From positions 172,752-236,751 of the IMG/VR virus record IMGVR_UViG_3300021959_006017: DNA of 64,000 nt, one strand, 5' to 3'. Made by a program: the position numbers and the translations under genes. Position 1 is the first letter of the stretch. Each line of letters opens with the position of its first letter. Below, in pieces: positions 40,210-52,681 of the stretch. Below the pieces are notes generated by a model that searched no databases, was not told where the DNA came from, and saw nothing but the letters and a program-made list of their open reading frames with translations.

Positions 40210-40629
40210 ATGAAAGTAGGTTTTACCTGTTCAACATTTGATTTATTGCATGCAGGGCACGTACAAATGTTACGTGAAGCAAAAGAGCAGTGTGAATATT
40301 TGATCTGCGGACTACAAGTAGACCCTAGTCAAGATAGAGCAGAAAAAAACGCTCCTATACAAACTATTGTTGAACGTTATACACAACTAAAAGCAGTAGG
40401 TTATGTAGACGAGATAGTTCCATATGGTACAGAACAGGATCTAGAAGATATTTTAACAATGTATCATATTGATGTTAGAATACTGGGAGAGGAGTATAGA
40501 GATAAAGACTTCACAGGCAAAGATATTTGCCGTAGACGTGATATTGATCTATACTTCAATAAACGAGACCATCGCTTTAGCTCAAGTGGGTTGAGGAAGC
40601 GTGTAGCAGAAAGACAAAATAGTGCTTAA
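40210..40629 (+). CDS. Cytidylyltransferase (TagD/RfaE-like)
   Basis: TFDLLHAGH, RFSSS. Confidence 0.85.
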   Translation: MKVGFTCSTFDLLHAGHVQMLREAKEQCEYLICGLQVDPSQDRAEKNAPIQTIVERYTQLKAVGYVDEIVPYGTEQDLEDILTMYHIDVRILGEEYRDKDFTGKDICRRRDIDLYFNKRDHRFSSSGLRKRVAERQNSA

Positions 40630-40756
40630 CCAAGATCCTACTATTAACGAACTTAGAAGAATCTTTATTGATGCTGGTTTAGAGTTTTACATCAAGAAAG
40701 AAAAAGGCAATGTAGCTAAAGTACACTTTATTATTAAGGAGAAAGAAAATGGCTAG
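40622..40756 (+). CDS. Small hypothetical protein (44 aa)
   Basis: GTG start; overlaps both neighbours; not in ORF track. Confidence 0.4.
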   Translation: MLNQDPTINELRRIFIDAGLEFYIKKEKGNVAKVHFIIKEKENG

Positions 40757-40919
40757 ACCCGAAAGAACAGCAGAAGATCAAAGGTTAATCGACGAATGGT
40801 TAAGCAAGAACAAAGTCACAGTGTTAGCACCAAATGCTCGCACAGACGCAAACGAGATTAGGTCCCTTTGGGGCAAAAAGAAAAAGGCTGGCAGACCAAA
40901 AAAGGAGAGTAATGTATGA
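40749..40919 (+). CDS. Small basic hypothetical protein (56 aa)
   Basis: SD AAGGAG; MARPERTAEDQRLIDEWL... Confidence 0.55.
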   Translation: MARPERTAEDQRLIDEWLSKNKVTVLAPNARTDANEIRSLWGKKKKAGRPKKESNV

Positions 40920-41065
40920 AACTTACATTAACGATAACATTCTTAGCAGGGTTTGTATTAGGTGGTTTACTAGTAACACTTACACACCCTTATGAAGAAT
41001 GTAAGCGTATGTATACAACACCAGAAGATATTTCAGAATGTGTTTGGATCAAGGAGAATCCATAA
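40916..41065 (+). CDS. Small membrane-anchored protein (49 aa)
   Basis: SD AAGGAG; ATGA coupling; N-terminal TM helix. Confidence 0.55.
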   Translation: MKLTLTITFLAGFVLGGLLVTLTHPYEECKRMYTTPEDISECVWIKENP

Positions 41066-41229
41066 TGTGGGCATTATTTGTTATTAGCACAGTTGTTGGA
41101 TTAGAAGAACCTAAAGTAACACGCTATGCAGAGTTTGACACTAAGCATGAGTGTTATGTCGAATGGTATAACCTAACCGAAAAGTTTACGCAAAATGAAA
41201 TTGCGTATTGCAAGGAATCAAATGGATAA
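41065..41229 (+). CDS. Small hypothetical protein
   Basis: TAATG coupling; SD AAGGAG; MWALFVIS... Confidence 0.5.
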   Translation: MWALFVISTVVGLEEPKVTRYAEFDTKHECYVEWYNLTEKFTQNEIAYCKESNG

Positions 41230-41929
41230 CTTTATATTTGATGTAGACGGCACACTAACGCCAAGTAGACAAGAAATAGTTCCTCAGTTTAGAGAGTACT
41301 TTAAACACTTTTGTGACGAACATGCTGTATATCTTGTAACTGGTAGCGACTACGCAAAAACTCTTGAGCAGTTAGGTCCCGAAATATGCAACAAAGTAAA
41401 GCGCATCTATAACTGTTCAGGCAATGATGTTTGGGAAAAAGGTGTAAATGTTCGCACAAATGAATGGACACTGCCAGAAGATGCACACGAATGGTTAAGT
41501 GAACAACTAACTGCAAGTGCATTTCCGTTGCGTACTGGGTTACACTTTGAACATAGGCCCGGATTAGTAAACTTTAGTATAGTAGGACGTAACGCTACAC
41601 TAGGCGAACGTAAGCTATATGTTGAATGGGATACAGAGCATAACGAACGAGAAGTTATTTCACATAACTTTAATAAACTATTTAAAGAACTAGAAGCAAG
41701 GCCTGGTGGCGAAACAGGAATAGATATTGCACCCGAAGGTGCAAATAAAAGTCAAATAATCAATGACTTTACAAAATATGAATGGATAAACTTTTTTGGT
41801 GATAGAATGGATCCAGCTGGAAACGACTATCCTTTAGGAAGTATTATCAAATACGGCATGGCCTATCATGTGAAAGATTGGATGGATACCTGGGAGAGAC
41901 TACGTGCATATACTGATTACGGGAAATAA
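41222..41929 (+). CDS. HAD-IIB phosphomannomutase-like enzyme
   Basis: FDVDGTLT, VTGSD, NFSIVGR, FFGD...GNDY (PMM-type). Confidence 0.85.
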   Translation: MDNFIFDVDGTLTPSRQEIVPQFREYFKHFCDEHAVYLVTGSDYAKTLEQLGPEICNKVKRIYNCSGNDVWEKGVNVRTNEWTLPEDAHEWLSEQLTASAFPLRTGLHFEHRPGLVNFSIVGRNATLGERKLYVEWDTEHNEREVISHNFNKLFKELEARPGGETGIDIAPEGANKSQIINDFTKYEWINFFGDRMDPAGNDYPLGSIIKYGMAYHVKDWMDTWERLRAYTDYGK

Positions 41930-42668
41930 AGGCTTCGTAGGAAGTGCTTTATACGATAGATTGAGTTTACGTAACGATGTACAAGCGGTACACGGTATAG
42001 ACTTAAAAGACGGACAAGATTTACTTACATTTGATCGATGGCGTGAAGTAGATCTTGTTATTCATCTTGCAGGTAAAAGCGGTGTACGTGAAAGCCTAAG
42101 TGATCCTAGTTCTTATTGGTTTAATAATGTAGAAGCAAGTCGTAAACTATTTGAACGTTATGCAGATACACGCATACTATATGCGAGTAGTTCGAGCGCA
42201 TACGAACCCGATCTAAATCCTTATGCGGCTAGTAAGTTTTGTTTGGAAGAACTTGCAGAACGTTATCCAAATACACTGGGTATGCGTTTCCATACAGTGT
42301 ATTCAGAAAAATGTCCCAGAGAAAATATGTTCTTTAACAAACTATTAAATGGTAAACTAGAATATGTAACTAGGCACTATAGAGATTTTATACATCTAAA
42401 CGACATACTAGATGCAATAGAAATACTAATCAACGCTACACATGTCAAGGGTGTAGTTGATATCGGAACAGGCAATCCTGTAAAGATCCAAGACTTGGCG
42501 CCGGACTTACCTGTCCGTCTAAATACCCCAGGAGAGAGAAGTTGGACTTGTGCTAACATAGAAAAAATGAAAGCACTAGGCTTTAAACCTAAATACTCAG
42601 TAGAAAACTTCTTGACAAACAAAGGCAAAGATAATATAATAAACTTATTCAATGGAGAAACAGTATGA
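41904..42668 (+). CDS. NAD-dependent epimerase/dehydratase
   Basis: ITGNKGFVG, HLAG, YASSS, YAASK. Confidence 0.88.
   Translation: MHILITGNKGFVGSALYDRLSLRNDVQAVHGIDLKDGQDLLTFDRWREVDLVIHLAGKSGVRESLSDPSSYWFNNVEASRKLFERYADTRILYASSSSAYEPDLNPYAASKFCLEELAERYPNTLGMRFHTVYSEKCPRENMFFNKLLNGKLEYVTRHYRDFIHLNDILDAIEILINATHVKGVVDIGTGNPVKIQDLAPDLPVRLNTPGERSWTCANIEKMKALGFKPKYSVENFLTNKGKDNIINLFNGETV
42612..42640 (+). promoter_or_regulatory. Sigma70 promoter for the clamp/TGT-like operon
   Basis: TTGACA-N17-TATAAT, perfect consensus. Confidence 0.75.
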
Positions 42669-43405
42669 AAGATATCTTACAAGACGTAGTTGCTCACACA
42701 CACGCACTTGGCTTCCTTAGCTTAGTAAAAGTAAGCAACGACGAAGGCACACAGATTGATGCTATGGCAGAAGATCGTTCAGTTATTTTGAGCGCAACTG
42801 CACATGCACCTGTTGCTGAGTTTAAAGGCACATTTGGTATGCCTAACTTAGACAAGTTAGCGTTACACTTAAAGAATCCGGAGTATCAAAAAGATGCAAA
42901 GATTAATGTAGTTGAAGCAGAGCGTAATGGCGAAACTGTTCCAACACACATTCACTTTGAAAATGATGCTGGTGATTTCCAAAACGACTATCGTTTTATG
43001 AACAAAGCGATTATCGAAGAAAAACTTAAAACAGTTAAGTTTAAAGGTGCAGCATGGAATGTAAAACTGCAACCTAGCATTGGTGCTATTGGACGTTTGA
43101 AGTTGCAAGCGGCAGCACATTCAGAAGAGCCTACATTTAATGTTACTACTGCTGAAACTGGCGGTGTTAACGATCTAGTGTTTAGCTTTGGTGATGCAAG
43201 CACACACGCAGGTAAGTTTGTATTTGAAACAAATGTAGAAGGTACACTTACACATACTTGGAGTTGGCCGGTAGCGCAAGTTCAAGCAATTCTTAACTTG
43301 GACGGTGATGTTACAATGAGTATTTCAGATCAAGGTGCTATGCAGATCACTGTTGATTCAGGACTAGTAAAGTACGACTACATTCTACCAGCACAGAGCA
43401 AGTAA
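42665..43405 (+). CDS. Probable sliding clamp (gp45-like)
   Basis: 246 aa alpha/beta protein ending YDYILPA; clamp loader and PolB also present; no strong motif. Confidence 0.55.
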   Translation: MKDILQDVVAHTHALGFLSLVKVSNDEGTQIDAMAEDRSVILSATAHAPVAEFKGTFGMPNLDKLALHLKNPEYQKDAKINVVEAERNGETVPTHIHFENDAGDFQNDYRFMNKAIIEEKLKTVKFKGAAWNVKLQPSIGAIGRLKLQAAAHSEEPTFNVTTAETGGVNDLVFSFGDASTHAGKFVFETNVEGTLTHTWSWPVAQVQAILNLDGDVTMSISDQGAMQITVDSGLVKYDYILPAQSK

Positions 43406-44955
43406 TGAACAGAGATTTAACTGCAACACAAAATGACTATGCTGTTTTTCTTCCAGCGTTAAGTGGCTTCTATGCCACTTACGTTGGTAAACAGCGTCAT
43501 GATGAATACGTAGACAAAAATCGTATTCCAAGCAACTTTGCTAATGGTGTTGAGAGTTTAAACTATCTTAATGCACAAGAAGGTGCATTTACTTACAAAT
43601 GGACTCTATACTCTGCAGGACACGCTGACTTAGACACAACTAAGTTTGTTCCAAAAGAAGATATGGTGCGTAACAGAGATAGAGAGAACACTTGGCTACT
43701 AGGCGACTCAGGCGGCTTCCAGATTGGTAAAGGCGTTTGGGAAGGTGATTGGAAGGATCTTAACTGTCCAAAAGCACAAAAGAAACGTGATGGTGTGTTA
43801 CGTTGGATGGATGCTTATATGGACTATGGTATGATCCTTGATATTCCAGCATGGGTTGCACGTAGCCCAGAAGGCGCAAAAGCAACAGGCATTTCAACAT
43901 ACCAAGAAGCAGTAGAAGCAACACGTATTAACAATGAATACTTTATGAAACATCGTACTGGTGCTTGTAAGTTCTTAAACGTACTACAAGGCGAAAACCA
44001 TGTGGAAGCAGATGACTGGTACGAGCAGATGAAAGACTTTTGTGATCCAGTTAAGTATCCCGATAATCATTTTAATGGCTGGTCAATGGGTGGACAAAAC
44101 ATGTGTGACCTAGAGCTTGCACTAAGACGTATTGTAACACTACACTACGACGGCTTGCTACAAAAAGGTGTACACGATGTAATGCACTTCTTGGGTACTT
44201 CAAAACTCGAATGGGCATTGTTGTTAACAGACATTCAACGAGCAGTAAGGAAGTATTATAATGAAAACTTCACTATCACTTTTGACTGTGCTAGTCCTTT
44301 CCTTGCAACCGCAAACGGACAGGTATACATACAGAATGAAACTACGGACAGGTCGAAATGGACATATCGAATGGTGCCGTCAGTTGACGATAAAAAATAT
44401 GCTACAGACACCCGTCTGTTTAGAGATGCTACTGTATCAGATGGGGTATTTAAAAACTTTGAAGACAGTCCCATCACTGCCGAACTCAAAGTATCAGACG
44501 TTTGTACATATGCTCCCGGAGATCTAAATAAAATAGGTAAAGAAGGAAAAACATCATGGGATAGTTTTTCATATGCGATCCAAATGGGTCATAACGTGTG
44601 GAGTCACATTAATGCAGTTCAAGAAGCGAACAGACAATACGACAATGGAGTTATTCCGAAAATGCTTGTACAAGAGCGATTTGACAGGGTTCTATTTAGA
44701 GATGTTGTGGAAGAAATATTCTCAAAGACTACGCTAGAAGATTCACTTGCAGTTATTAAAGAACACGAAAAGTTCTTTATGAGTATCAGAGGCACACGCG
44801 GTTATACTGGCAAAAAGATTGTTAGTGCTAGACCTAAGTTTGCTGAACTATTTGATGTAGAAGAAGTAGAAGTAGATTCGGAAGAGTTTACTGAAGCACA
44901 AATACAAAAACTTGAGGAACTAGAAGATGAGCAACTTCACGGAGAAACACAATAA
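43405..44955 (+). CDS. dpdA: TGT/DpdA-like guanine transglycosylase
   Basis: DSGGFQ, ILDIP, VLQG, HFLG, TFDCASP; clustered with queD/folE/queE. Confidence 0.75.
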   Translation: MNRDLTATQNDYAVFLPALSGFYATYVGKQRHDEYVDKNRIPSNFANGVESLNYLNAQEGAFTYKWTLYSAGHADLDTTKFVPKEDMVRNRDRENTWLLGDSGGFQIGKGVWEGDWKDLNCPKAQKKRDGVLRWMDAYMDYGMILDIPAWVARSPEGAKATGISTYQEAVEATRINNEYFMKHRTGACKFLNVLQGENHVEADDWYEQMKDFCDPVKYPDNHFNGWSMGGQNMCDLELALRRIVTLHYDGLLQKGVHDVMHFLGTSKLEWALLLTDIQRAVRKYYNENFTITFDCASPFLATANGQVYIQNETTDRSKWTYRMVPSVDDKKYATDTRLFRDATVSDGVFKNFEDSPITAELKVSDVCTYAPGDLNKIGKEGKTSWDSFSYAIQMGHNVWSHINAVQEANRQYDNGVIPKMLVQERFDRVLFRDVVEEIFSKTTLEDSLAVIKEHEKFFMSIRGTRGYTGKKIVSARPKFAELFDVEEVEVDSEEFTEAQIQKLEELEDEQLHGETQ

Positions 44956-45130
44956 ACTTGCTACACACCTGCAAGAACTTTATCGCAAGCACAGAGCACT
45001 TGACGAAGAAGTAAAAGACATGTATACTAAGTTTGCAGATGACGGTGCTATTAACCGTAAGAAAACTCAAAAGCTATGGCTCAAAGATGAAATACACAGA
45101 TTAGAAACAGAACTAAAGGCACTAGGATGA
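44927..45130 (+). CDS. Small coiled-coil protein (DUF465/YdcH-like)
   Basis: KHRALDEEV...KTQKLWLKDEI. Confidence 0.6.
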   Translation: MSNFTEKHNKLATHLQELYRKHRALDEEVKDMYTKFADDGAINRKKTQKLWLKDEIHRLETELKALG

Positions 45131-45729
45131 CATTAAATGTAGTTAAACTAAACAAAGCAATCGAAGTCGGAACTGTGATTCCTCTAAAAGAATGCGGTGG
45201 TAATATCGGCCGATGGGTTGAAGATCAGCTTGAAGATAACGGATACTCTGTTAACAGAGGCAAAGGTATTGATTTGCAAAAGTTAGGTATTGAAGTCAAA
45301 ACTCGTAAAGTTGATAGCGGAAGCGGACATACAGTAGGTGCAATGTTACCACAAGACATTGTTCAAGAAGATTGGCAAGCTGGTAATAATATGTTTGACA
45401 AAGTACAACGTCAGTACAGAGTTAAACATAAAGTAAACGAACTTACAGGCGATAACATTGTTGTAAGTGCGAAAGTACATGACTTTACTGACGATACAAT
45501 CCAAACGAAACTTAAAGAAGCATGGAGCCATTGTCGAAATGTTCTTGTGCAGAACTCCGGACATGACTTTTCTTATATTAGAGGAGAAGGTATGTGGGCT
45601 TATTTAGAACTACAAGAAAATGGTTCCTATCAGTTCCGTATTACTGACAAGTATATGAATGAAATGGAAAACATTGCAAACCTTAATCGAACAAAAATGT
45701 TTTTTGTAGAGGCACAGTATGAAGCGTGA
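45127..45729 (+). CDS. PD-(D/E)xK restriction-endonuclease-like protein
   Basis: GNIGRWVE...GIDL...IEVKT. Confidence 0.55.
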   Translation: MTLNVVKLNKAIEVGTVIPLKECGGNIGRWVEDQLEDNGYSVNRGKGIDLQKLGIEVKTRKVDSGSGHTVGAMLPQDIVQEDWQAGNNMFDKVQRQYRVKHKVNELTGDNIVVSAKVHDFTDDTIQTKLKEAWSHCRNVLVQNSGHDFSYIRGEGMWAYLELQENGSYQFRITDKYMNEMENIANLNRTKMFFVEAQYEA

Positions 45730-46252
45730 TTATGAAACTGGTGTAGCAGATGATGCAGTTTTCTTCATAGGCGTAGAAGTAGAAAAGACTCCTGCATTTG
45801 GATTAAAAACATTATTTGTTACAGGTGTACAACCTTGTGATGTTATTCAAAAACATTACGATGAAGAACAATGCGAACATATCTTCTTTGGTGCTAATCA
45901 TAGTTTTAATCCAGGTGTAAACTTTCCAGAAGATAATGATCAATGGGATCCTTGGGACAATATGATCAAAGCATTTTTAACAGCAGGCAAACTGTGTAGT
46001 TTAGATATTCCCATTTCACTTGCAGAAGCATTTTTAGAATCACCATTGATCGAATACGACAACTTTATCCCACAACTACGCATTCCATTGCCTTATGCAA
46101 AACTGTGGAACTACAACACAATGTTGAAGATTGATGATAAAGACTTTAAGGCAACTAATCCTGGTGTTTGGTGTCATAGTTTACACGATCTAATGGACAG
46201 AGAAAAGTTTACAGATTGGGGCAAATATGGGCTTGACAAAGTTATTGAATGA
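45719..46252 (+). CDS. Hypothetical protein in the modification locus
   Basis: GVEVEKTP, HIFFGANHSF, KIDDKDFKATNPGVW. Confidence 0.65.
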   Translation: MKRDYETGVADDAVFFIGVEVEKTPAFGLKTLFVTGVQPCDVIQKHYDEEQCEHIFFGANHSFNPGVNFPEDNDQWDPWDNMIKAFLTAGKLCSLDIPISLAEAFLESPLIEYDNFIPQLRIPLPYAKLWNYNTMLKIDDKDFKATNPGVWCHSLHDLMDREKFTDWGKYGLDKVIE

Positions 46253-46270: not shown

Positions 46271-46741
46271 ATGGAACAAGAACGTTACGAAACTTATATG
46301 AAACGTAGAATGAAAGAAGAAGATTTTAAAATGGCTCAAGACAATGTAATGAGTAAAGCAGATCGTAGTATTTGGGTAACCTTCCGCAAAGAAGGTGTGC
46401 ATATGTATCCAGGTGCTGACAAAGATCCTAAACTAGCAACAGGCGATTGGGATGATGTATCATTCCTTGGCATTCCACATCGTCATATCTTTCACTTCAA
46501 AGTACGTATTCAGGTATTTCATAATGATCGTGACATTGAGTTTATTCAGTTTAAACGTTGGATGGAGCGTCTTTATGATGTAGAAGGTGTACTAGAACTT
46601 AATCATAAATCATGTGAGATGATCGCAGATGATCTCTATGAAGCTATTTCTGCAAAGTATCCCGGCCGCTTTGTTGAAATTGATGTAGCCGAAGATGGCG
46701 AAAATGGCTGTTCAATCTTTTATCCTAAACCGCAACTTTAA
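46271..46741 (+). CDS. queD: QueD-like 6-carboxytetrahydropterin synthase
   Basis: T-fold metal motif HRHIFH, SCEMIA, final strand VAEDGEN. Confidence 0.7.
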   Translation: MEQERYETYMKRRMKEEDFKMAQDNVMSKADRSIWVTFRKEGVHMYPGADKDPKLATGDWDDVSFLGIPHRHIFHFKVRIQVFHNDRDIEFIQFKRWMERLYDVEGVLELNHKSCEMIADDLYEAISAKYPGRFVEIDVAEDGENGCSIFYPKPQL

Positions 46742-46757
46742 TGCAGAGGAACCTAAA

Positions 46758-46970
46758 ATGGCAATCGAGTTTAATCGAGAAGCATATAATAAAGTCTTTA
46801 ACGACTTGGATAAGTACCGCGACTACTGTCGCTTTGAAGGTAAGGTCTTTGATGAAGCAGACCTTTTTAAAAAGGATTCGCCAAGATGGCAAGCCTATCA
46901 AAAGTACCAAGGTTGGCTACGAGCAAAAGCTCGAACTGCCGGAAGGAAATTTAACAATCGGAGAAACTAA
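46758..46970 (+). CDS. Hypothetical protein
   Basis: SD GAGGA; MAIEFNREAY... Confidence 0.6.
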   Translation: MAIEFNREAYNKVFNDLDKYRDYCRFEGKVFDEADLFKKDSPRWQAYQKYQGWLRAKARTAGRKFNNRRN

Positions 46971-48029
46971 ATGACTATCTATATCGTAGACATCGAAGCA
47001 GTTGATACACGTTACACTAAACAATGGAAGGACTATCTTCCAAAGCAACTGCAACGGGCTACGAATAAAGAAGTTGTAGTTATTAGTGGAGGAGAAACGC
47101 CTCAGGCTACTACGCCTGGGGCTTTTCTTAACTTCGGTGGTACAAATGTTTATAAGTCAAAACAACTAGAACAGATTGGAGAAATGTTCTGCAATGGTGA
47201 AGTTAAGAACGGCGATTATTTTTTGTATACCGATGCCTGGAATCCTACAGTTATACAACTACGCTACATGGCAGAGTTACTTGGTGTTAATGTTAGCATT
47301 GGTGGCCTCTGGCATGCTGGTAGTTATGACCCACAAGATTTCTTGGGCAGACTAATAGGTAGCAAACCTTGGGTCAGACATGCTGAGATGTCAATGTTTG
47401 AATGTTACGATGACAACTTCTTTGCAAGTGATTTCCATATTGATATGTTTACAGATGTATTTGACGAAGATTATGCAGTTGACTGGAATAGAATACATCG
47501 TGTAGGTTGGCCCATGGAGTATCTAAAGAACAGTTTAGATAGCTATAAAGGTATGGAAAAACGAGATCTTATTCTCTTTCCGCATCGTGTTGCTCCTGAA
47601 AAACAAGTTGATATTTTCCGTGATCTAGCAGAGCAACTTCCTGAGTACGAGTTTGTTATCTGTCAAGAACGTGAACTTACTAAAAATGAATACCATAACT
47701 TGTTAGGTGAAGCAAAACTTGTGTTTAGTGCTAACCTACAAGAGACACTGGGCATTAGTTGGTATGAAGGTGCTCTTGTAAATGCTATTCCTATGGTTCC
47801 TGATAGATTAAGTTATTCAGAGATGGCACTACCCGAGTTTAAGTATCCAAGTGTGTGGACTGAAGACTTTACAAGTTACAGACAGCATAGAAATAAAGTA
47901 GTTGCACAAATACGTGAGTACATGGAAAACTATGACGATTTCTTAGTAAGCCTTGAGAAGCAACGTACTAAACTAAACAAAGAATTTTTTTCAGGAGCAG
48001 CATTGTATGACGCAATCAAAGAAAGATGA
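46971..48029 (+). CDS. GT-B glycosyltransferase
   Basis: FPHRVAPEKQ, QETLGISWYEG (EX7E), PDRLSYSEM. Confidence 0.8.
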   Translation: MTIYIVDIEAVDTRYTKQWKDYLPKQLQRATNKEVVVISGGETPQATTPGAFLNFGGTNVYKSKQLEQIGEMFCNGEVKNGDYFLYTDAWNPTVIQLRYMAELLGVNVSIGGLWHAGSYDPQDFLGRLIGSKPWVRHAEMSMFECYDDNFFASDFHIDMFTDVFDEDYAVDWNRIHRVGWPMEYLKNSLDSYKGMEKRDLILFPHRVAPEKQVDIFRDLAEQLPEYEFVICQERELTKNEYHNLLGEAKLVFSANLQETLGISWYEGALVNAIPMVPDRLSYSEMALPEFKYPSVWTEDFTSYRQHRNKVVAQIREYMENYDDFLVSLEKQRTKLNKEFFSGAALYDAIKER

Positions 48030-48387
48030 TACCTTTACTATTAGTGTTGGTGATACTATTTGGCATTCTAATGAATCCCCTAATATTACATTCGACACTA
48101 TGATAACAACAGCAGATACATTTACTATCAGTGATCCTGCAGATACAGTTACTATTGACATAAACGATTATGTAAGTGATGATACTTTTGATATCAGTAA
48201 CATTACATTTGGTAGTGTTCCATTTGTAGATACTATGCCTAGTTTAGATCGTGTTAATAATATGTGCGAAGAATATCCTGCACTTGCAAAGGCATACGAA
48301 AACTTCAAAACAATATACAAAATGACTGAACAAGACTACAAAGGCAAACTAAAAGAAAGAGGCTTAGACGATGACATTCCGTTCTAA
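48007..48387 (+). CDS. Hypothetical protein
   Basis: Thr/Asp-rich N-terminus; YPALAKAYENFK. Confidence 0.55.
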   Translation: MTQSKKDDTFTISVGDTIWHSNESPNITFDTMITTADTFTISDPADTVTIDINDYVSDDTFDISNITFGSVPFVDTMPSLDRVNNMCEEYPALAKAYENFKTIYKMTEQDYKGKLKERGLDDDIPF

Positions 48388-48808
48388 ATTTTTATCCTGG
48401 TTAGACAAGCTAGGACGCAAGCGAGTAATTATGGACCGTTATGAAAACGAGCCGTACTTAACTCGCTATTATCTTTTCTTAAAAAACCGTAAATGGTTTC
48501 CGTTTAACGTGTTTCTACACAATTTTCACAAAGGAGATTTAGATGATTTACACGATCACCCTTGGCCTTATCTTACTATCATTTTGCGTGGCGGGTATTG
48601 GGAGCATACTCCCCGAGGACGCTTTTGGAGAGCACCGGGACACATCAGAATTAGTACTCCAAGTAGTTTGCATCGGATTGAGCTTGAGCCTGGTGTTGAT
48701 GCTTGGACACTCTTTATACCAGGTCCTAAAATAAGAGAATGGGGATTCATTCGCAAAGGCGAGTGGGTTCAAAATGAACAATATCTAAAAGAGAAATATG
48801 AACAATGA
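48371..48808 (+). CDS. Cupin-fold protein
   Basis: LHDHPW...GGYWE...HRIEL. Confidence 0.7.
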   Translation: MTFRSKFLSWLDKLGRKRVIMDRYENEPYLTRYYLFLKNRKWFPFNVFLHNFHKGDLDDLHDHPWPYLTIILRGGYWEHTPRGRFWRAPGHIRISTPSSLHRIELEPGVDAWTLFIPGPKIREWGFIRKGEWVQNEQYLKEKYEQ

Positions 48809-49365
48809 TTAAGAAACATTATTATTCGTGGCAAGACATTGAACGTGCTTGCCTAAACATTGCATTGCAAATGTATAAAGATAACTGGCGTCCTGACTAC
48901 ATTGTAGGTATTACACGTGGCGGCAATGTACCAGCTACTATCCTTAGCAATATGTTAGGTGTACGTGGCGATGCCCTTAAAGTAAGTTTAAGGGACAATC
49001 AAGGCGGTGAAAGTGAATCTAACTGTTGGATGAGCGAAGATGCATTTGGTTATGTTGACGAAGAACAACGAGACTTGTTTAAAACTCGTTGGGATATTAG
49101 TAAACGTAAAAACATTCTCGTTGTAGATGACATTAACGACACTGGTGCTACATTTAACTGGATCAAAGAAGATTGGCGCAGTACATGCTTGCCAAATGAA
49201 GATAAGGCTTGGGAAAGTGTTTGGCATCGTAACGTTCGGTTTGCTACTATTACAGATAACTTGTCAAGCGAGTTTAACGGTAAAGTAGACTACACTACAC
49301 ACGAAGTAAACAAAGCAGAAGAAGATGTATGGTTAGTTTACCCATGGGAGAATGTAGGACAATGA
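48805..49365 (+). CDS. Purine phosphoribosyltransferase (xanthine-guanine type)
   Basis: GITRGG, LVVDDINDTGAT, WLVYPWE. Confidence 0.85.
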   Translation: MIKKHYYSWQDIERACLNIALQMYKDNWRPDYIVGITRGGNVPATILSNMLGVRGDALKVSLRDNQGGESESNCWMSEDAFGYVDEEQRDLFKTRWDISKRKNILVVDDINDTGATFNWIKEDWRSTCLPNEDKAWESVWHRNVRFATITDNLSSEFNGKVDYTTHEVNKAEEDVWLVYPWENVGQ

Positions 49366-49541
49366 ACAAAGAATATATTGAAGCTTTAGAAAAAACTATA
49401 GCTCGTAAAAAAGCTGAACTTGAGCAAATGTATAAAGACGGAGTAAAGATGCAAGCATGTATTAACTTTCGAGAAGAAATCACAAGAAAGCAAAAAACAC
49501 TTGCAAGAGCTAAAAAAGAAATGCAAGGCAAAAGAAAATGA
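49362..49541 (+). CDS. Small coiled-coil protein
   Basis: ATGA coupling at both ends. Confidence 0.5.
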   Translation: MNKEYIEALEKTIARKKAELEQMYKDGVKMQACINFREEITRKQKTLARAKKEMQGKRK

Positions 49542-49924
49542 CATTTAATGAAATACCTTGGAAGGACGTTTTAGTTGATACAAGAGAATATACAGTTTTT
49601 AAAGATGGTTTTCCAGTTACCGAAGGCCATGTTCTTTTTGTGCCTAAGGTGGAAGATTGGGATCACTTGGCTAAATGCTATAAAGCAGCTTATGCTTGGG
49701 GCTATGACTGGGTTCAAAAGGGTTATTGTGATAGTTACAACATCGGACAAAATGTAGGCGAAGAAGCAGGACAAACTGTTATGTGGCCTCATGTACATTT
49801 GATTCCACGCCGTAAAGGTGATATGGATGATCCTCGTGGCGGGGTGCGTCACGTTATACCAGAGAAAGGAAACTATAGACTATGGCATGTGGATGCGGAA
49901 GATCGCCAACCGGAAAATGCATAG
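49538..49924 (+). CDS. HIT-family nucleotide hydrolase
   Basis: FPVTEGH, AGQTV.WPHVHLIPR. Confidence 0.88.
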   Translation: MTFNEIPWKDVLVDTREYTVFKDGFPVTEGHVLFVPKVEDWDHLAKCYKAAYAWGYDWVQKGYCDSYNIGQNVGEEAGQTVMWPHVHLIPRRKGDMDDPRGGVRHVIPEKGNYRLWHVDAEDRQPENA

Positions 49925-50019: not shown

Positions 50020-50219
50020 AAGAACAACTAGTCAAAGCAGCACGTATGCACGCCGAAGGTGAACTAGAACGTGCAAAAACAAACATCCTAGTTTATATGA
50101 ATCAAAGTGTAGGTATTGGTGAACACAGCGATATTGTTGAAGCTATTCAAGAAGAACTTGATAAAATGGCTTCTGCAACAGATCGTATTGAGATGCTAGA
50201 TAAGTATTTCTCAGCATAA
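50016..50219 (+). CDS. Hypothetical protein
   Basis: VGIGEHSDI motif; SD AAGGAG. Confidence 0.65.
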   Translation: MKEQLVKAARMHAEGELERAKTNILVYMNQSVGIGEHSDIVEAIQEELDKMASATDRIEMLDKYFSA

Positions 50220-51034
50220 TGTCTATTACACTTTTTTTAGGCGACAGTCACAGTGCAGGGTATACCATTAACAAAGAAGGTATACCTCTATACTGGACTG
50301 AAAATAACTATGCAGAAATATACGCTGAAAAAAATAGTACACCAAGTGTTATTTACGCACAAGCGGGAGGCTGTAATAGAAAGTTTCCTATATGGCTAAG
50401 TTGTATGCTAGATAGGTATGATATTTCAAAAATATTTATACAAAGCACACACTGGAATAGATATCTTGTTGCGAATGATCCTAGTTTAGACTTAGGCGAA
50501 AGTTACAAAAACGATACTTTTTTAGAAAGAAGTGAAGATAGTAAAAACGGTTTAGTCCATAGATATACTGATAAAAAATATGCAGGTAATAGATTTGAAA
50601 ATCTAATGGGACAGTATGAAGAATACTGGGACAAGTTTAAAGGTTTTAAAGGAAGTTTAGACAATCCAAAAGGAGAGTTTGAAATATTAGAAAACCAATA
50701 CCGCTATACAAAACTTTGGCACGAAGCACTAACGTATCTACAACTACGTGAATACCTTATGGATTTTACTGTAATAGATCATATGGTAAGAAAAACAAAT
50801 ATTCCTGTTTATGTTTGGACTATTAATAATAGAATACATTTGCCTAAGAATACAAACTTATACAAAGATTTTGACAATGTTAGGTTTGTATATACTTCTG
50901 CCGAAGATTTCTTGTTTGAAAGACATCGAATGAAGATATCTAAAATGGTCGTAGTAGACAAAGAACATTATACATATGATGTACATAGTGCAATAGCAGA
51001 ACACTACTTGCCGTATATTGAAAAAAACTATTGA
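50219..51034 (+). CDS. SGNH hydrolase-like protein
   Basis: FLGDSHS; C-terminal DKEHY. Confidence 0.55.
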   Translation: MSITLFLGDSHSAGYTINKEGIPLYWTENNYAEIYAEKNSTPSVIYAQAGGCNRKFPIWLSCMLDRYDISKIFIQSTHWNRYLVANDPSLDLGESYKNDTFLERSEDSKNGLVHRYTDKKYAGNRFENLMGQYEEYWDKFKGFKGSLDNPKGEFEILENQYRYTKLWHEALTYLQLREYLMDFTVIDHMVRKTNIPVYVWTINNRIHLPKNTNLYKDFDNVRFVYTSAEDFLFERHRMKISKMVVVDKEHYTYDVHSAIAEHYLPYIEKNY

Positions 51035-51059
51035 CAAAAACCTAAATATATCATATAAT
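51031..51059 (+). promoter_or_regulatory. Sigma70 promoter with nested CTAAATA
   Basis: TTGACA-AAAACCTAAATATATCA-TATAAT. Confidence 0.75.
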
Positions 51060-51101
51060 AAAACAATAAGACATCCTCGTCTTTAACTCGGAGTATAAAA
51101 A

Positions 51102-51791
51102 TTGATGAGCAAAGCAGAACAAATAAAAGCAAAACTAGAAGATGCTGGCATCCGCTATTGGGCAGGTGACAACATCTCAGAAGTCCTACAAGCAGGTGAC
51201 AAAGAAGCACTTATTGAAGATGCCACACTAGCATTTAATCAAGTACTAGATGCACTAGTTATTGATCGCTATAACGATCCTAACTCGCAAGGTACAGCAA
51301 GACGTCTTGCAAAAATGTACTTTAATGAGATTATGGCAGGACGCTATGATCCTAAACCCGACGCAACAGCATTTCCAAATGATAGCGATGACCGTTATGA
51401 AGGTATGCTAGTTGTACGTTCAGAACTAAAAAGTATATGTTCACATCATCACCAGCCAGTTACTGGTGTAGCGTACATTGGTATTATTGCCGCAGACAAA
51501 CTTATCGGACTTAGCAAGTACACACGTATTGCACAATGGTGTGCTAGACGTGGTACACTGCAAGAAGAACTTGCAAACGATATTGCACGTGAGATTAAGG
51601 CTGCAACTGGTGCTCAAAACTTAGGTGTATACATTCAAGCAACACACGGTTGCTGTGAAAATCGTGGCATTATGGCACATAGTTCACTTACACAGACAAC
51701 TGTACTTGAAGGTAGTTTTAAACACGATCCAGGTGCAAAGAAAGAGTTCTTTGACAACATTAAACTACAACAGGAGTTTGCACCACGATGA
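51102..51791 (+). CDS. folE: GTP cyclohydrolase I
   Basis: CSHHH, GLSKYTR, LQEEL, HGCCENRG. Confidence 0.93.
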   Translation: MMSKAEQIKAKLEDAGIRYWAGDNISEVLQAGDKEALIEDATLAFNQVLDALVIDRYNDPNSQGTARRLAKMYFNEIMAGRYDPKPDATAFPNDSDDRYEGMLVVRSELKSICSHHHQPVTGVAYIGIIAADKLIGLSKYTRIAQWCARRGTLQEELANDIAREIKAATGAQNLGVYIQATHGCCENRGIMAHSSLTQTTVLEGSFKHDPGAKKEFFDNIKLQQEFAPR

Positions 51792-52681
51792 AGTTAAGAT
51801 ATTCAGAAGCATTTTATAGTGTACAGGGCGAAGGCAAGTTTGTTGGAGTCCCTAGTGTGTTCTTAAGAACATTTGGTTGTAACTTTCGTTGCATGAACTT
51901 TGGCACAGGCGAAACAAAAGATCGATGGACACTGCACAAAGAAGGTAAGAAGTATAACGATGAAGTTAAAGCTCTTATCGATGCTGGTGTTCATAAGACT
52001 ACAAAAGAGTTTAATGACTTGCCTATCATTCACACAGGCTGTGACACATATGCAAGTATCTATCCAGAGTTTAAAGACTTCAACAAACTAGCAGAAGTTG
52101 ATGAAGTAGTTGAACATTTGCTGTCACTTACTCCAGAAGGTAAGTGGACACAGGACAATGGTCAAGACATTCATTTGATTATGACCGGTGGAGAGCCTTT
52201 GTTAGCGTGGCAAAAGCTCTACATTGATTTGTTCGAACATCCACGTATGCAGGATTTAAAAAATGTCACATTTGAAACAAACACTACACAACATTTACAC
52301 GACGATTTCTTCAACTATCTCACAGACCAAGACAGATTTGCGGTCACGTGGTCTTGTTCCCCAAAACTTAGTGTTAGCGGAGAACCTTGGGATACTGCTA
52401 TACTGCCTGCTGTCGCTCGCGAGTATAGCCTTGTTGACGGCAGTGACATGTATCTCAAGTTTGTTGTCGCTACTGCTGACGATTTCGAAGAAGTTACAAG
52501 AGCTGTCGAAGAGTATCGTAGCGCCGGGGTCGAGTGTCCGGTATATCTTATGCCGCTTGGAGGACGTAGCGAAGAATACAACCTCAATGTTAAAGAAGTC
52601 GCCGAAGCATGTATGGAGCGAGGTTGGAGGTTCAGCCCCCGACTACACATCAGCCTATTCGGAAATGCATGGGGGACCTAA
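51788..52681 (+). CDS. queE: 7-carboxy-7-deazaguanine synthase (radical SAM)
   Basis: FYSVQGEG, FLRTFGCNFRC...CDT, TGGEP, ETN, SPKL, SPRLH. Confidence 0.9.
   Translation: MKLRYSEAFYSVQGEGKFVGVPSVFLRTFGCNFRCMNFGTGETKDRWTLHKEGKKYNDEVKALIDAGVHKTTKEFNDLPIIHTGCDTYASIYPEFKDFNKLAEVDEVVEHLLSLTPEGKWTQDNGQDIHLIMTGGEPLLAWQKLYIDLFEHPRMQDLKNVTFETNTTQHLHDDFFNYLTDQDRFAVTWSCSPKLSVSGEPWDTAILPAVAREYSLVDGSDMYLKFVVATADDFEEVTRAVEEYRSAGVECPVYLMPLGGRSEEYNLNVKEVAEACMERGWRFSPRLHISLFGNAWGT

What the first reader, a model, noticed from the sequence alone, without database searches (positions are those of the whole stretch)
40210..52681. 7-deazaguanine modification locus without QueC but with a glycosyltransferase and NDP-sugar genes
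Seen: a TGT/DpdA-like gene coupled (TAATG) to the probable sliding clamp, then QueD-like, a GT-B glycosyltransferase, cupin, PRTase, HIT, FolE and QueE. Cytidylyltransferase, phosphomannomutase-like and epimerase genes lie just upstream. No QueC/QueF/Gat-QueC is visible in the window. Known: FolE-QueD-QueE convert GTP to 7-carboxy-7-deazaguanine (CDG), QueC makes preQ0, and DpdA proteins swap such bases into phage DNA to resist restriction. Inference: the phage may insert CDG or a derivative and then glycosylate it, giving a sugar-decorated deazaguanine in DNA that I do not recognise as described; orphan 45719..46252 and the cupin are candidate tailoring enzymes.
Basis: partly seen in the sequence, partly recalled or inferred. 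Interest (0 to 1): 0.85.

Follow-up and report, generated by a model that had tools for sequence, protein, structure and literature searches.

The report
Deazaguanine DNA-modification locus with conserved glycosyltransferase
A marine jumbo phage carries the genes to replace guanine in its DNA with 7-deazaguanine, always together with a glycosyltransferase and sugar-activating genes, which hints at a sugar-decorated purine in DNA that nobody has yet described chemically.

Summary
One name is wrong. The 'QueD-like' gene (46271-46741) carries the DpdL signature LxxxHRHxF and is 53% identical to Acidovorax phage ACP17 DpdL. DpdL is the proposed 7-carboxy-7-deazaguanine decarboxylase. The missing QueC therefore fits the known 2'-deoxy-7-deazaguanine (dDG) route, but a true QueD is also absent from the window.

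- **DpdA-like protein (516 aa):** it matches no Pfam, PHROG, NCBIfam or PADLOC model. Its model (pLDDT 90.6) hits only tRNA-guanine transglycosylases, and its profile aligns to ACP17 DpdA (hhalign 96.6%).
- **Glycosyltransferase:** it is GT4-like, with an EX7E motif.
- **Linkage:** the glycosyltransferase lies beside DpdL, and usually beside DpdA, in five phage lineages: this marine clade, Pseudomonas PA5oct, Sinorhizobium Phosso, ACP17 and Xanthomonas X1/Burkholderia BCSR5. In related viral contigs it accompanies DpdA in 47/47 loci, and DpdL accompanies it in 41/41.
- **Experimental hint:** PA5oct DNA is reported to carry a modified G of unknown structure.

Deazaguanine replacement of G is well supported. 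Glycosylation of that base is plausible, untested, and not described in the papers I could search. I rate it a new variant of a known kind.

The parts
40210..40629 (+). Small nucleotidyltransferase of the cytidylyltransferase-like family, the candidate enzyme that activates a sugar-1-phosphate to an NDP-sugar
   Evidence: Pfam PF01467 1.5e-13. Best NCBIfam hits are RfaE domain II (heptose-1-P adenylyltransferase, 6.9e-18) and TagD (5e-17), both far below the equivalog cut-offs. Present in 16 of 22 close loci with enough flank.
41195..41929 (+). Phosphomannomutase-like HAD-IIB enzyme (sugar-6-P to sugar-1-P, or a sugar phosphatase)
   Evidence: Pfam PMM 6.1e-23. NCBIfam HAD-IIB 1.8e-12.
41904..42668 (+). 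Short NAD-dependent SDR epimerase/dehydratase acting on an NDP-sugar
   Evidence: Pfam Epimerase 1.9e-20. Best NCBIfam hit is ADP-glyceromanno-heptose 6-epimerase at 6.2e-15, then GalE; all are below the cut-offs.
42665..43405 (+). Conserved 246-aa replication-module protein (putative sliding clamp, unverified). It is translationally coupled to the DpdA-like gene.
   Evidence: phrog_12062 5e-31. 38% identical to PA5oct EST35_0314 and 30% to the Phosso protein annotated as sliding clamp. TAATG overlap. No PDB match.
43405..44955 (+). DpdA-like DNA guanine transglycosylase, a very divergent TGT-fold enzyme
   Evidence: AF2 pLDDT 90.6. Foldseek top 17 PDB hits are all TGT, E 1e-6, probability 1.0. 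A profile search of the PDB gives only TGT at the top and aligns DSGGFQ to the TGT DSGGYQ motif. hhalign to ACP17 DpdA 96.6%, E 5e-10. Invariant D101, S102, G104, D146, H261, G264, D294 in 51 diverse homologues. No Pfam, PHROG, NCBIfam or PADLOC hit.
44927..45130 (+). Small DUF465 protein that follows the DpdA-like gene in close relatives
   Evidence: Pfam DUF465 2.9e-10. Found in 76 of 81 loci.
45127..45729 (+). MutH/Sau3AI-like endonuclease. It is a variable insert, not core, and may cut unmodified DNA.
   Evidence: 41% identity over 56 aa to E. coli MutH, including D-x6-E-x-K. Present in only 4 of 81 related loci.
45719..46252 (+). orf177, a conserved protein of unknown fold and function. 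It is a candidate tailoring or helper enzyme of the pathway.
   Evidence: Found in 76 of 81 loci. 27% identical to ACP17 gp122, E 1e-8. AF2 pLDDT 90.4. No PDB fold match, best E 0.025. The only BFVD match is ACP17 gp122, E 1.3e-5.
46271..46741 (+). DpdL, a QueD paralogue proposed to decarboxylate CDG to 7-deazaguanine.
   Evidence: The motif LGIPHRHIF equals the LxxxHRHxF signature of PMC10516641 section 16. Identity is 53% to ACP17 gp125, 61% to PA5oct 0318, 64% to the Phosso homologue and 49% to the X1 homologue. A QueD HMM gives only E 0.022.
46741..46974 (+). Small ORF (77 aa) between DpdL and the glycosyltransferase, function unknown
   Evidence: Found in 44 of 81 loci. No family hit.
46971..48029 (+). 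GT-B glycosyltransferase, GT4-like and probably retaining
   Evidence: Invariant R206-x4-K211 and E258-x7-E266. A profile search of the PDB hits the GT4 enzyme WlaC at 1.3e-3. Atlas feature scores are 0.96-0.99 to clusters carrying GT4-clan Pfam families (PF00534, PF13692, PF13439), and TM is 0.75-0.83 to GT4 models. Identity is 45% to PA5oct 0317, 48% to the Phosso homologue and 38% to ACP17 gp124.
48007..48387 (+). Acidic 126-aa ORF, function unknown
   Evidence: Found in 35 of 81 loci at about 42% identity. No family hit.
48371..48808 (+). Cupin metalloprotein, an accessory gene that could be a sugar isomerase/epimerase or an oxygenase
   Evidence: phrog_4786 1.2e-38. A profile search of the PDB hits Cupin_2 at E 0.03. 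Invariant H61, H63, E78, H101. Weak homologue in X1.
48805..49365 (+). Xanthine/guanine-type phosphoribosyltransferase
   Evidence: Pfam Pribosyltran 5.5e-13. Best NCBIfam hit is xanthine PRTase at 3.8e-12. Present in 22 of 22 close loci and 17 of 29 diverse loci.
49538..49924 (+). HIT-family nucleotide hydrolase/transferase
   Evidence: Pfam HIT 2e-10. HinT-like at 4.6e-9.
50219..51034 (+). 271-aa ORF of unknown function, a variable insert
   Evidence: Present in only 6 of 81 loci. No family hit.
51102..51791 (+). GTP cyclohydrolase I (FolE), the first step from GTP
   Evidence: Pfam 1.9e-37. NCBIfam FolE 2.5e-38.
51788..52681 (+). QueE (CDG synthase, radical SAM), a variant with a roughly 49-residue insert before the third cluster cysteine
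   Evidence: The top three PDB hits are all QueE: 1.3e-5, 6e-4 and 0.024. TIGR QueE models reach 1e-12 but stay below their cut-offs. 31% identical to X1 QueE, E 1e-47. Cysteine pattern shown.
53638..54054 (+). Short HhH-GPD superfamily (DNA glycosylase-like) protein just downstream. Whether it belongs to the system is uncertain.
   Evidence: Pfam PF00730 2.9e-6, 28 bits, above the 26.2 cut-off. Found in 15 of 81 loci.

Best explanation
This locus makes a 7-deazaguanine-type base and puts it into the phage's own DNA in place of guanine. It very probably decorates that base, or its precursor, further with a sugar.

Proposed steps:
1. FolE converts GTP to dihydroneopterin triphosphate.
2. A QueD converts that to CPH4. 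QueD is not encoded in the window. It must come from elsewhere in the roughly 340-kb genome or from the host.
3. QueE makes 7-carboxy-7-deazaguanine (CDG).
4. DpdL, a QueD paralogue without the catalytic cysteine, removes the carboxyl to give 7-deazaguanine. This is why no QueC is needed.
5. The divergent TGT-fold DpdA-like enzyme exchanges guanine in replicated phage DNA for this base.
6. The xanthine/guanine-type PRTase probably recycles the released guanine to GMP, which feeds FolE again.
7. A GT4-type glycosyltransferase, with orf177 as a possible helper, modifies the deazapurine. The sugar donor is made by the PMM-like, nucleotidyltransferase and epimerase genes, which look manno-hexose- or heptose-like.

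What is shown: gene identities, folds, motifs and gene linkage. What is taken from published relatives: dDG in phage phiST, which has DpdL, and a modified G in PA5oct. What is inferred only: the glycosylation step, its acceptor atom and the guanine-salvage loop.

My sub-confidences are about 0.85 for deazaguanine replacement of G in DNA, and about 0.4 for the glycosyltransferase acting on that base.
For: - FolE and QueE are identified.
- DpdL is identified by its signature motif and by 49-64% identity to the DpdL of ACP17, PA5oct, Phosso and X1.
- The DpdA-like protein has a TGT fold. TGT is the only top hit of its profile in the PDB. hhalign to ACP17 DpdA gives 96.6%. Its conserved Asp residues lie in the DSGG, LD.P and FDC motifs.
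- The glycosyltransferase keeps its donor-binding R/K residues and its EX7E motif and resembles GT4 enzymes.
- Linkage in close relatives: glycosyltransferase 47/47, DpdL 59/59, QueE 31/31 and FolE 30/31 of DpdA-anchored loci with enough flank.
- Linkage in glycosyltransferase-anchored loci (38-88% identity): DpdL 41/41, a DpdA 45/47 and FolE 29/29.
- The glycosyltransferase lies next to DpdL, and except in Phosso next to DpdA, with different gene orders in PA5oct, ACP17, X1, Phosso and BCSR5.
- Literature: dDG fully replaces G in phiST, which has DpdL and no QueC. Expressing ACP17 DpdA plus DpdL in E. coli gave no dDG, and the authors suggested that other enzymes may be needed (PMC10516641). 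[quoted passage not shown]
- ThyA is canonical (46% identical to E. coli ThyA) and sits next to DHFR, so the window shows no hydroxymethyl-pyrimidine acceptor for the glycosyltransferase.
Against: - No chemistry exists for this phage or for any relative that carries the glycosyltransferase.
- 7-Deazaguanine offers only a C-H at C7, so O-glycosylation is impossible. A C- or N-glycoside, or action on CDG or another intermediate, has to be assumed.
- DpdL's decarboxylase activity has never been shown in vitro.
- QueD is missing from the window and from 31/31 close loci, so the pathway as encoded here is incomplete.
- Eleven DpdL-bearing phage records have no detectable homologue of this glycosyltransferase: five records of the Cellulophaga phiST group, plus RHph_I1_18, Ahp1, Bakedbeans, BUCT-ZZ01, D479 and MA9V-3. 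The glycosyltransferase is therefore not needed for dDG.
- The sugar genes are present in only 16-19 of 22 close loci and 9-11 of 29 diverse loci.
- The related loci share ancestry, so the high counts are not independent events. The independent evidence is the five lineages.
Confidence: 0.5

Rival explanations
1. The phage DNA carries plain 2'-deoxy-7-deazaguanine, as in phiST and Vibrio phage VP1. The glycosyltransferase and the sugar genes serve another target, such as a virion or host protein, a cell-envelope precursor or a small molecule. They merely travel with the replication and modification module.
For: dDG is made without any such glycosyltransferase in phiST. VP1 has full dDG substitution (preprint 10.1101/2025.10.29.685425). 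DG has no obvious sugar-accepting group. JGI labels some homologues 'glycosyltransferase involved in cell wall biosynthesis'. The sugar genes are not universal.
Against: The glycosyltransferase lies directly beside DpdL, and usually beside DpdA, in five lineages with rearranged gene orders. It was never found without DpdL in loci with enough flank: 41/41. It sits inside an early replication-type module, not among structural or lysis genes.
Confidence: 0.3
2. DpdL is not a simple decarboxylase in the phages that carry the glycosyltransferase. The base that ends up in DNA is a different CDG derivative, for example a CDG sugar ester or a product made jointly by DpdL, orf177 and the glycosyltransferase, and it may be built on the free base before DpdA inserts it.
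For: ACP17 DpdA plus DpdL gave no dDG in E. coli. orf177/gp122 is a fold-novel partner restricted to these loci. The DpdA-like enzyme is about 250 residues longer than phiST DpdA3 and only weakly related to it, which would fit a bulkier substrate.
Against: DpdL here shares the full signature with phiST DpdL (33% identity, E 8e-8), and that phage makes dDG. There is no direct evidence for any alternative product.
Confidence: 0.1
3. The deazapurine enters DNA at the nucleotide level. The PRTase converts the deazapurine base with PRPP into a nucleotide, as in toyocamycin and tubercidin biosynthesis. HIT and host enzymes process it, and the polymerase incorporates it. The TGT-like protein would have another role.
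For: A PRTase and a HIT protein lie in the locus, and the PRTase is present in 22/22 close loci. From my own knowledge, deazapurine antibiotic pathways combine FolE, QueD and QueE with a PRTase.
Against: Every phage known to carry deazaguanine encodes a DpdA, and insertion is considered post-replicative (PMC10516641). The PRTase is closest to xanthine/guanine PRTases, and a guanine-salvage role explains it. ACP17, X1 and Phosso show no clear PRTase in their loci.
Confidence: 0.06
4. The system modifies tRNA rather than DNA, giving a queuosine-like, possibly glycosylated, wobble base.
For: The closest solved folds are tRNA-guanine transglycosylases. The glycosyltransferase fold resembles, among many GT4 enzymes, the tRNA-queuosine mannosyltransferase family, TM 0.78.
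Against: - The profile aligns to a phage DpdA.
- PA5oct DNA itself is modified at G.
- There is no tRNA gene in the window.
- The glycosyltransferase has no QTMAN_N domain hit.
- No QueA, QueG or QueF genes that would build a queuosine side chain were found.
Confidence: 0.04

Closest known systems
dDG system of Cellulophaga phage phiST (DpdA3, DpdL, FolE, QueD, QueE; Cui et al. 2023, PMC10516641)
   Same: It has FolE and QueE, a DpdL with the LxxxHRHxF signature, no QueC, and a TGT-superfamily transglycosylase. G is replaced post-replicatively by 7-deazaguanine.
   Different: phiST encodes QueD, and it has no homologue of this glycosyltransferase or of orf177. Its DpdA3 is 259 aa and only marginally related to the 516-aa protein here (hhalign 59%). 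It has no NDP-sugar, PRTase, HIT or cupin genes.
Homologous loci of Pseudomonas jumbo phage PA5oct (EST35_0316-0322), Acidovorax phage ACP17 (gp119-126), Sinorhizobium phage Phosso, Xanthomonas phage X1 and Burkholderia phage BCSR5
   Same: They share the same glycosyltransferase (25-48% identity), the same DpdL (42-64%), QueE and a DpdA-type enzyme. PA5oct also shares the same DpdA-like family (37%) and the polymerase-clamp-DpdA-...-RNaseH synteny.
   Different: None of them has the PMM, nucleotidyltransferase and epimerase trio at this position. ACP17 and X1 use a DpdA2-like enzyme. ACP17 encodes QueD, and X1 has a PP-loop protein that may be QueC-like. The chemistry is undetermined in all of them. 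Only PA5oct has restriction-resistance evidence for a modified G (PMC12191111).
Glucosyl-hydroxymethylcytosine of T-even phages (alpha- and beta-glucosyltransferases)
   Same: It works alike: a GT-B enzyme adds a sugar from an NDP-sugar to an already modified base in phage DNA, so that the DNA escapes restriction.
   Different: The acceptor there is a hydroxymethyl group on a pyrimidine made at the nucleotide level. This glycosyltransferase shows no sequence match to the solved T4 enzymes in the PDB searches. No hydroxymethylase is seen in the window; ThyA is canonical.
Mannosyl- and galactosyl-queuosine in animal tRNA (QTMAN/GTDC1, QTGAL)
   Same: This is the only known case of a sugar attached to a 7-deazaguanine derivative. 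QTMAN is a GT4-like GT-B enzyme, and its family is among the structural neighbours of this glycosyltransferase (TM 0.78).
   Different: There the sugar goes onto the cyclopentenediol of queuosine in RNA. Nothing here can build that side chain. No QTMAN_N domain was found. Other GT4 families score as well or better (TM 0.79-0.83).
Deazapurine nucleoside antibiotic pathways (toyocamycin, tubercidin), recalled from my own knowledge
   Same: They combine FolE, QueD and QueE chemistry with a phosphoribosyltransferase.
   Different: Those pathways make free nucleosides and have no transglycosylase. The PRTase here is closest to xanthine/guanine salvage enzymes.

Membership tests
Phage 7-deazaguanine DNA-modification systems (DpdA plus preQ0/CDG pathway) | A TGT-superfamily DNA transglycosylase (DpdA) with the TGT fold and conserved catalytic aspartates | tested here: met
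   Foldseek: the top 17 PDB hits are TGT, E 1e-6. hhalign to ACP17 DpdA 96.6%. Invariant D101, D146 and D294. D101 and D146 align to the TGT DSGGYQ and FDE motifs.
Phage 7-deazaguanine DNA-modification systems (DpdA plus preQ0/CDG pathway) | The transglycosylase is recognised by the curated DpdA or TGT sequence models (Pfam PF23859 or PF01702, PADLOC Dpd models) | tested here: not met
   No hit for the window protein or for any of 51 diverse family members. It is a separate, very divergent clade with 981 clusters at 50% identity.
Phage 7-deazaguanine DNA-modification systems (DpdA plus preQ0/CDG pathway) | FolE and QueE are encoded | tested here: met
   FolE 1.9e-37. QueE: the three best PDB hits are QueE, and it is homologous to the annotated QueE of X1 and PA5oct.
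Phage 7-deazaguanine DNA-modification systems (DpdA plus preQ0/CDG pathway) | QueD (CPH4 synthase with the catalytic cysteine, CxxxHG[HY]) is encoded | tested here: not met
   No such motif, and no QueD HMM hit better than E 0.022 in the six-frame translation of the window. Absent from 31/31 close loci, but present between FolE and QueE in sister lineages. The rest of the genome could not be read.
Phage 7-deazaguanine DNA-modification systems (DpdA plus preQ0/CDG pathway) | A 7-deazaguanine derivative is present in virion DNA | not testable with these tools
   Only indirect evidence exists: the related phage PA5oct has restriction-resistant DNA with a modified G (PMC12191111).
preQ0, ADG or G+ branch (QueC, Gat-QueC, QueF, ArcS) | A QueC-family PP-loop enzyme is encoded | tested here: not met
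   No SGGxDS motif and no phmmer --max hit with E. coli QueC better than E 0.02.
dDG branch (DpdL) | A QueD paralogue with LxxxHRHxF replacing CxxxHGH | tested here: met
   LGIPHRHIF at residues 67-75 of the annotated 156-aa protein (found in the six-frame scan). 53% identical to ACP17 DpdL and 33% to phiST DpdL.
dDG branch (DpdL) | The partner transglycosylase belongs to subfamily DpdA3 | tested here: inconclusive
   hhalign to phiST DpdA3 gives 59% probability, E 9e-5, over 83 columns. It is closer to the DpdA2-like enzyme of ACP17. It probably forms a subfamily of its own.
GT-B glycosyltransferases of the GT4 type | Donor-binding R/K residues and an EX7E motif in the C-terminal Rossmann domain | tested here: met
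   R206, K211, E258 and E266 are invariant across six lineages. The profile hits the GT4 enzyme WlaC at 1.3e-3 over the R..K region.
GT-B glycosyltransferases of the GT4 type | Passes the Pfam Glycos_transf_1 (PF00534) model, or has a GT-B fold | tested here: inconclusive
   The protein itself has no Pfam hit. The Atlas model of its own cluster representative superposes on GT4 families at TM 0.75-0.83. I did not model the protein itself.
T4-type DNA glucosyltransferases (AGT, BGT) | Sequence relationship to the solved T4 enzymes | tested here: not met
   Neither the single sequence nor the profile finds them in the PDB.
tRNA-queuosine mannosyltransferase (QTMAN) | The QTMAN_N domain (PF12038) | tested here: not met
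   No Pfam hit. The structural similarity is no better than to other GT4 families.
MutH/Sau3AI endonucleases (for 45127-45729) | The D-x6-E-x-K catalytic motif in register with MutH | tested here: met
   BLASTP to E. coli MutH: 41% over 56 aa, E 4e-4, with IDLQKLGIEVK aligned to QDFAALGVELK. No family-model hit.

The most novel reading that the evidence does not exclude
These phages replace guanine with a glycosylated 7-deazaguanine. Because 7-deazaguanine has no heteroatom at C7, the sugar would be attached as a C-glycoside on the electron-rich pyrrole carbon, or as an N-glycoside. This would be the first sugar-decorated purine in any DNA. It would be made by a DpdA-like/DpdL/GT4/orf177 module that is widespread in marine jumbo phages and is also present in cultured phages of Pseudomonas, Acidovorax, Xanthomonas, Burkholderia and Sinorhizobium.
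Probability: 0.35. Interest if true: 0.9.

Novelty: new variant of a known kind. Interest (0 to 1): 0.72.

Why it matters
Deazaguanine DNA modifications protect phages from restriction enzymes and are themselves the target of newly found defences, such as END nucleases and Dag glycosylases.

- **Possible new chemistry.** A glycosylated deazapurine would be a new class of DNA base, and possibly a new enzymatic chemistry if the sugar is joined as a C-glycoside to a nucleobase in DNA.
- **It may explain two published puzzles.** ACP17 DpdA plus DpdL did not reconstitute dDG, and PA5oct behaves as a 'hypermodified G' phage.
- **The family is large.** The DpdA-like query found more than 7,700 clusters at 90% identity and 981 at 50% identity, and no current family model detects it. 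Surveys of phage DNA modification therefore miss it.
- **It is testable now.** Five cultured phages carry the module, so mass spectrometry and gene knockouts can settle the question directly.

Tried and rejected
- Megablast of the locus against 50,697 phage records found no match.
- Pfam, PHROG, NCBIfam and PADLOC gave nothing for the DpdA-like protein, DpdL, the glycosyltransferase, orf177, the 126-aa ORF or the 271-aa ORF, apart from unnamed PHROGs.
- Single-sequence PDB searches for the DpdA-like protein, the glycosyltransferase and the 200-aa nuclease found nothing useful.
- The reading of 46271-46741 as QueD is rejected on motif and homology.
- I looked for QueD and QueC in the whole window by regular expressions and by HMM or phmmer with filters off. 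Neither is there.
- I tried to find a QueD elsewhere in genomes of this clade, using a sister-lineage QueD as query. The 80 best loci, out of 507 confirmed matches, all belong to other lineages, so this is inconclusive.
- orf177 as a macro domain was an Atlas lead at 0.80-0.81, which is chance level. The fold search did not support it: a macrodomain ranks 47th at E 0.57.
- Relating orf177 to X1 h143, BCSR5 QRE00064, the Phosso 'glycosylase' or PA5oct 0320 by hhalign was not significant. The same held for phiST CGPG_00066.
- The sliding-clamp label for 42665-43405 has no PDB support.
- A hydroxymethyl-pyrimidine acceptor for the glycosyltransferase is disfavoured, because ThyA is canonical and sits next to DHFR.
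- tRNA as the target is disfavoured; there are no tRNA genes in the window.
- Literature searches for a glycosylated deazaguanine in DNA, for DpdL follow-ups and for PA5oct chemistry found no description.

Full report
**What is there.** The region 40210-52681 is a run of co-oriented, tightly packed + strand genes. It lies between a family-B DNA polymerase (37084-39753) and an RNase H/FEN gene (54032-55015).

Standard family models recognise these genes:
- a cytidylyltransferase-like nucleotidyltransferase (40210-40629);
- a PMM-like HAD-IIB enzyme (41195-41929);
- an SDR epimerase (41904-42668);
- a type-I PRTase (48805-49365);
- a HIT protein (49538-49924);
- FolE (51102-51791).

QueE (51788-52681) scores below the curated cut-offs. 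Its three best PDB matches are nonetheless the three solved QueE enzymes, with collinear N-terminal, GGEP and C-terminal motifs. The TAATG overlap between 42665-43405 and 43405-44955 is real. The window has no megablast match among 50,697 phage records.

**What phage this is.** The polymerase is closest (43-50%) to jumbo phages Phosso, Atu_ph07, Vibrio 2.275.O and the 121Q/Rak2 group. The exact glycosyltransferase protein occurs on contigs of up to 343 kb. This is an uncultured jumbo phage.

**The transglycosylase.** The 516-aa product of 43405-44955 matches nothing in Pfam, PHROGs, NCBIfam or PADLOC. None of 51 diverse homologues matches TGT or DpdA models either. Three kinds of evidence still place it in the TGT/DpdA superfamily:
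- A profile of the family finds only bacterial TGT at the top of the PDB (E about 0.3). Its DSGGFQ aligns to the TGT DSGGYQ motif and its LD.P to FDE.
- An AlphaFold2 model with mean pLDDT 90.6 retrieves TGTs of bacteria, archaea and human as its 17 best PDB matches (E 1e-6, probability 1.0).
- hhalign against the DpdA of phage ACP17 gives 96.6% probability over 181 columns that include all conserved motifs.

D101, D146 and D294 are invariant. From my knowledge of TGT, they correspond to the two substrate-binding aspartates and the nucleophile. The relation to phiST DpdA3 is only marginal (59%). The family is very large: more than 7,700 clusters at 90% identity scored below E 0.001, and 981 clusters at 50% identity. 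I conclude it is a DpdA-like enzyme of a distinct, so far unmodelled subfamily.

**The 'QueD-like' gene is DpdL.** The product of 46271-46741 carries LGIPHRHIF. Cui et al. 2023 (PMC10516641, section 16) define DpdL by the change of the QueD signature CxxxHGH to LxxxHRHxF. They propose DpdL as the decarboxylase that turns CDG into 7-deazaguanine in phages that have DpdA, FolE, QueD and QueE but no QueC.

The window protein is 53% identical (E 4e-45) to ACP17 gp125. It is 61%, 64% and 49% identical to the PA5oct, Phosso and X1 homologues, and 33% to phiST DpdL. Against ACP17 QueD, or a QueD HMM, it scores only marginally.

The absence of QueC was confirmed by motif and by phmmer with filters off. 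It is therefore explained by a described pathway. The same searches show that a true QueD is also absent from the 64 kb. In sister lineages a QueD with the catalytic cysteine sits between FolE and QueE. In 31/31 close relatives with enough flank it does not. Whether it lies elsewhere in the genome or is supplied by the host could not be settled.

**The glycosyltransferase and its linkage.** The 352-aa product of 46971-48029 has no Pfam hit. Three results show what it is:
- An alignment across six lineages keeps R206-x4-K211 and E258-x7-E266, the donor-binding and EX7E features of GT4 enzymes.
- Its profile hits the GT4 enzyme WlaC in the PDB (1.3e-3).
- The Atlas places it with viral and bacterial clusters carrying GT4-clan Pfam families (feature scores 0.96-0.99). 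The model of its own cluster superposes on GT4 families at TM 0.75-0.83. The tRNA-queuosine mannosyltransferase family is one of these, at 0.78, no better than the others.

The important result is genetic. Homologues lie directly next to DpdL and/or DpdA in these phages:

| Phage | Gene order |
|---|---|
| PA5oct | DpdA-like, glycosyltransferase, DpdL |
| ACP17 | orf177-like gp122, DpdA, glycosyltransferase, DpdL, QueE |
| Xanthomonas X1 | glycosyltransferase, DpdA, DpdL, QueE |
| Burkholderia BCSR5 | DpdL ... glycosyltransferase, DpdA ... QueE |
| Phosso | clamp, unknown gene, DpdL, glycosyltransferase, unknown gene, FolE ... QueE (DpdA-like elsewhere) |

Counts in viral contigs, restricted to loci with enough flank:
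- DpdA-anchored loci: the glycosyltransferase is present in 47/47.
- Glycosyltransferase-anchored loci (38-88% identity): DpdL in 41/41, a DpdA in 45/47 and FolE in 29/29.

These contigs are related by descent, so the counts are not independent. The independent evidence is the recurrence in five lineages with different gene orders and even different DpdA subfamilies.

The converse does not hold. Among 28 DpdL-bearing phage records, 11 have no detectable homologue of this glycosyltransferase: five of the phiST group plus RHph_I1_18, Ahp1, Bakedbeans, BUCT-ZZ01, D479 and MA9V-3.

**Other members.**
- **orf177 (45719-46252)** is conserved in 76 of 81 close loci and is homologous to ACP17 gp122 (BLAST 1e-8; Foldseek 1.3e-5). 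It folds confidently (pLDDT 90.4) into something with no significant PDB match. It is a genuine unknown tied to this module.
- **The cupin (48371-48808)** has an HxH...E...H site and is accessory.
- **The PRTase** is closest to xanthine/guanine PRTases and is present in 22/22 close loci. I infer that it recycles the guanine released by each base exchange.
- **The three sugar genes** are most similar to the RfaE-II nucleotidyltransferase, a PMM-type mutase and ADP-heptose 6-epimerase or GalE. All scores are far below the equivalog cut-offs. They suggest a phage-made NDP-manno-hexose or heptose, but they are present in only 16-19 of 22 close loci.

**Mechanism.** The best-supported reading runs as follows:
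1. GTP is converted by FolE, then by an external QueD, then by QueE to CDG.
2. DpdL converts CDG to 7-deazaguanine.
3. The DpdA-like enzyme exchanges it for G in phage DNA.
4. A GT4-catalysed sugar transfer follows, and the PRTase salvages the released guanine.

Published support comes from relatives. phiST, which has DpdL and no QueC, has all G replaced by dDG. The authors could not obtain dDG from ACP17 DpdA plus DpdL and suggested that other enzymes are needed. PA5oct DNA resists five G-containing restriction enzymes and is targeted by nucleases that sense modified G, but its base was not identified (PMC12191111).

The weak point is chemical. 7-Deazaguanine has no heteroatom substituent at C7. 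A sugar would have to be attached as a C-glycoside or N-glycoside, or the glycosyltransferase acts on CDG or on another acceptor. No hydroxymethyl-pyrimidine route is visible: ThyA is 46% identical to E. coli ThyA and sits next to DHFR.

**Comparison and novelty.** The locus works like the phiST-type dDG system and shares its DpdL. It differs in five ways:
- a distinct DpdA subfamily;
- no QueD in the locus;
- an obligatory GT4 partner;
- orf177;
- sugar-nucleotide, PRTase, HIT and cupin genes.

Iyer et al. 2021 noted a 'deazaguanine synthesis/incorporation system' in PA5oct. Full-text searches found no paper that describes a glycosylated deazaguanine in DNA or assigns a role to this glycosyltransferase. 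I therefore rate it a new variant of a known kind, with about a one-in-three chance that it encodes a chemically new DNA base.

Noticed in passing
window 53638-54054 (+): A short (138 aa) HhH-GPD superfamily protein, of the EndoIII/Ogg type of DNA glycosylase fold, lies 1 kb downstream of QueE. Pfam gives 2.9e-6, just above the gathering score. This is intriguing because host END nucleases use an inactive EndoIII domain to sense hypermodified bases. It could be a glycosylase, a decoy or a repair factor.
   Followed up: partly
window 45127-45729 (+): A MutH/Sau3AI-like endonuclease is inserted between the DpdA-like gene and orf177. It is 41% identical to E. coli MutH over 56 aa, including D-x6-E-x-K. 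It is present in only a few relatives. It might cut unmodified (host) DNA while the phage's own DNA is protected.
   Followed up: partly
window 33447-35003 (+): A 518-aa, largely low-complexity (Pro/Lys-rich) protein ends in a pterin-4a-carbinolamine-dehydratase-like domain (Pfam 2.3e-14). The usual HHP motif reads DHF. In some relatives the domain is a separate ORF. A link to the pterin intermediates of the deazaguanine pathway is conceivable but untested.
   Followed up: partly
window 51788-52681; L001, L084, L082, L085: The QueE of this phage, of PA5oct and of X1 has CX3C followed by an insert of tens of residues (about 49 in this phage) before the third cluster cysteine (GCD[TS]). ACP17 and Phosso QueE keep the classical CX3CX2C.
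   Followed up: partly
L129:10337-10852, L130:10903-11514, L161:10713-11216 and others: Sister lineages of the same phage group carry a true QueD (with the catalytic Cys) between FolE and QueE. The window's clade has lost it from this position: 0 of 31 loci.
   Followed up: partly
window 44927-45130 (+): A 67-aa DUF465 protein follows the DpdA-like gene in 76 of 81 close relatives. Its role is unknown.
   Followed up: no
window 23260-26320 (+): The phage encodes a DnaJ (J domain plus C-terminal domain) and a ClpB/Hsp104-type double-AAA chaperone side by side.
   Followed up: no
window 15361-18289 (+): Two adjacent 2OG-Fe(II) oxygenases (PF13759) are followed by DHFR and a canonical thymidylate synthase that is 46% identical to E. 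coli ThyA.
   Followed up: partly
window 12116-12799 (+): A Bax1-inhibitor family membrane protein (Pfam 1.5e-53) in a phage genome.
   Followed up: no
window 57443-59937 and 61459-62679 (+): A MoxR-type AAA ATPase lies next to a DUF2201 metallopeptidase/VWA protein. Further downstream is a protein with a major-tropism-determinant N-terminal domain (Mtd_N, 1.5e-10).
   Followed up: no
L086 (Rhizobium phage RHph_I1_18), 6408-7232: In this phage, which lacks the glycosyltransferase, a macro-domain ('Appr-1-p processing') gene sits directly after DpdL. It may be another kind of partner for DpdL.
   Followed up: no
L084 (Xanthomonas phage X1), 5332-5865: A small PP-loop 'PAPS reductase family' protein lies between FolE and the glycosyltransferase in X1. 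It could be a QueC-like amidotransferase or nitrile synthase, which would mean that not all loci with this glycosyltransferase stop at CDG or DG.
   Followed up: no
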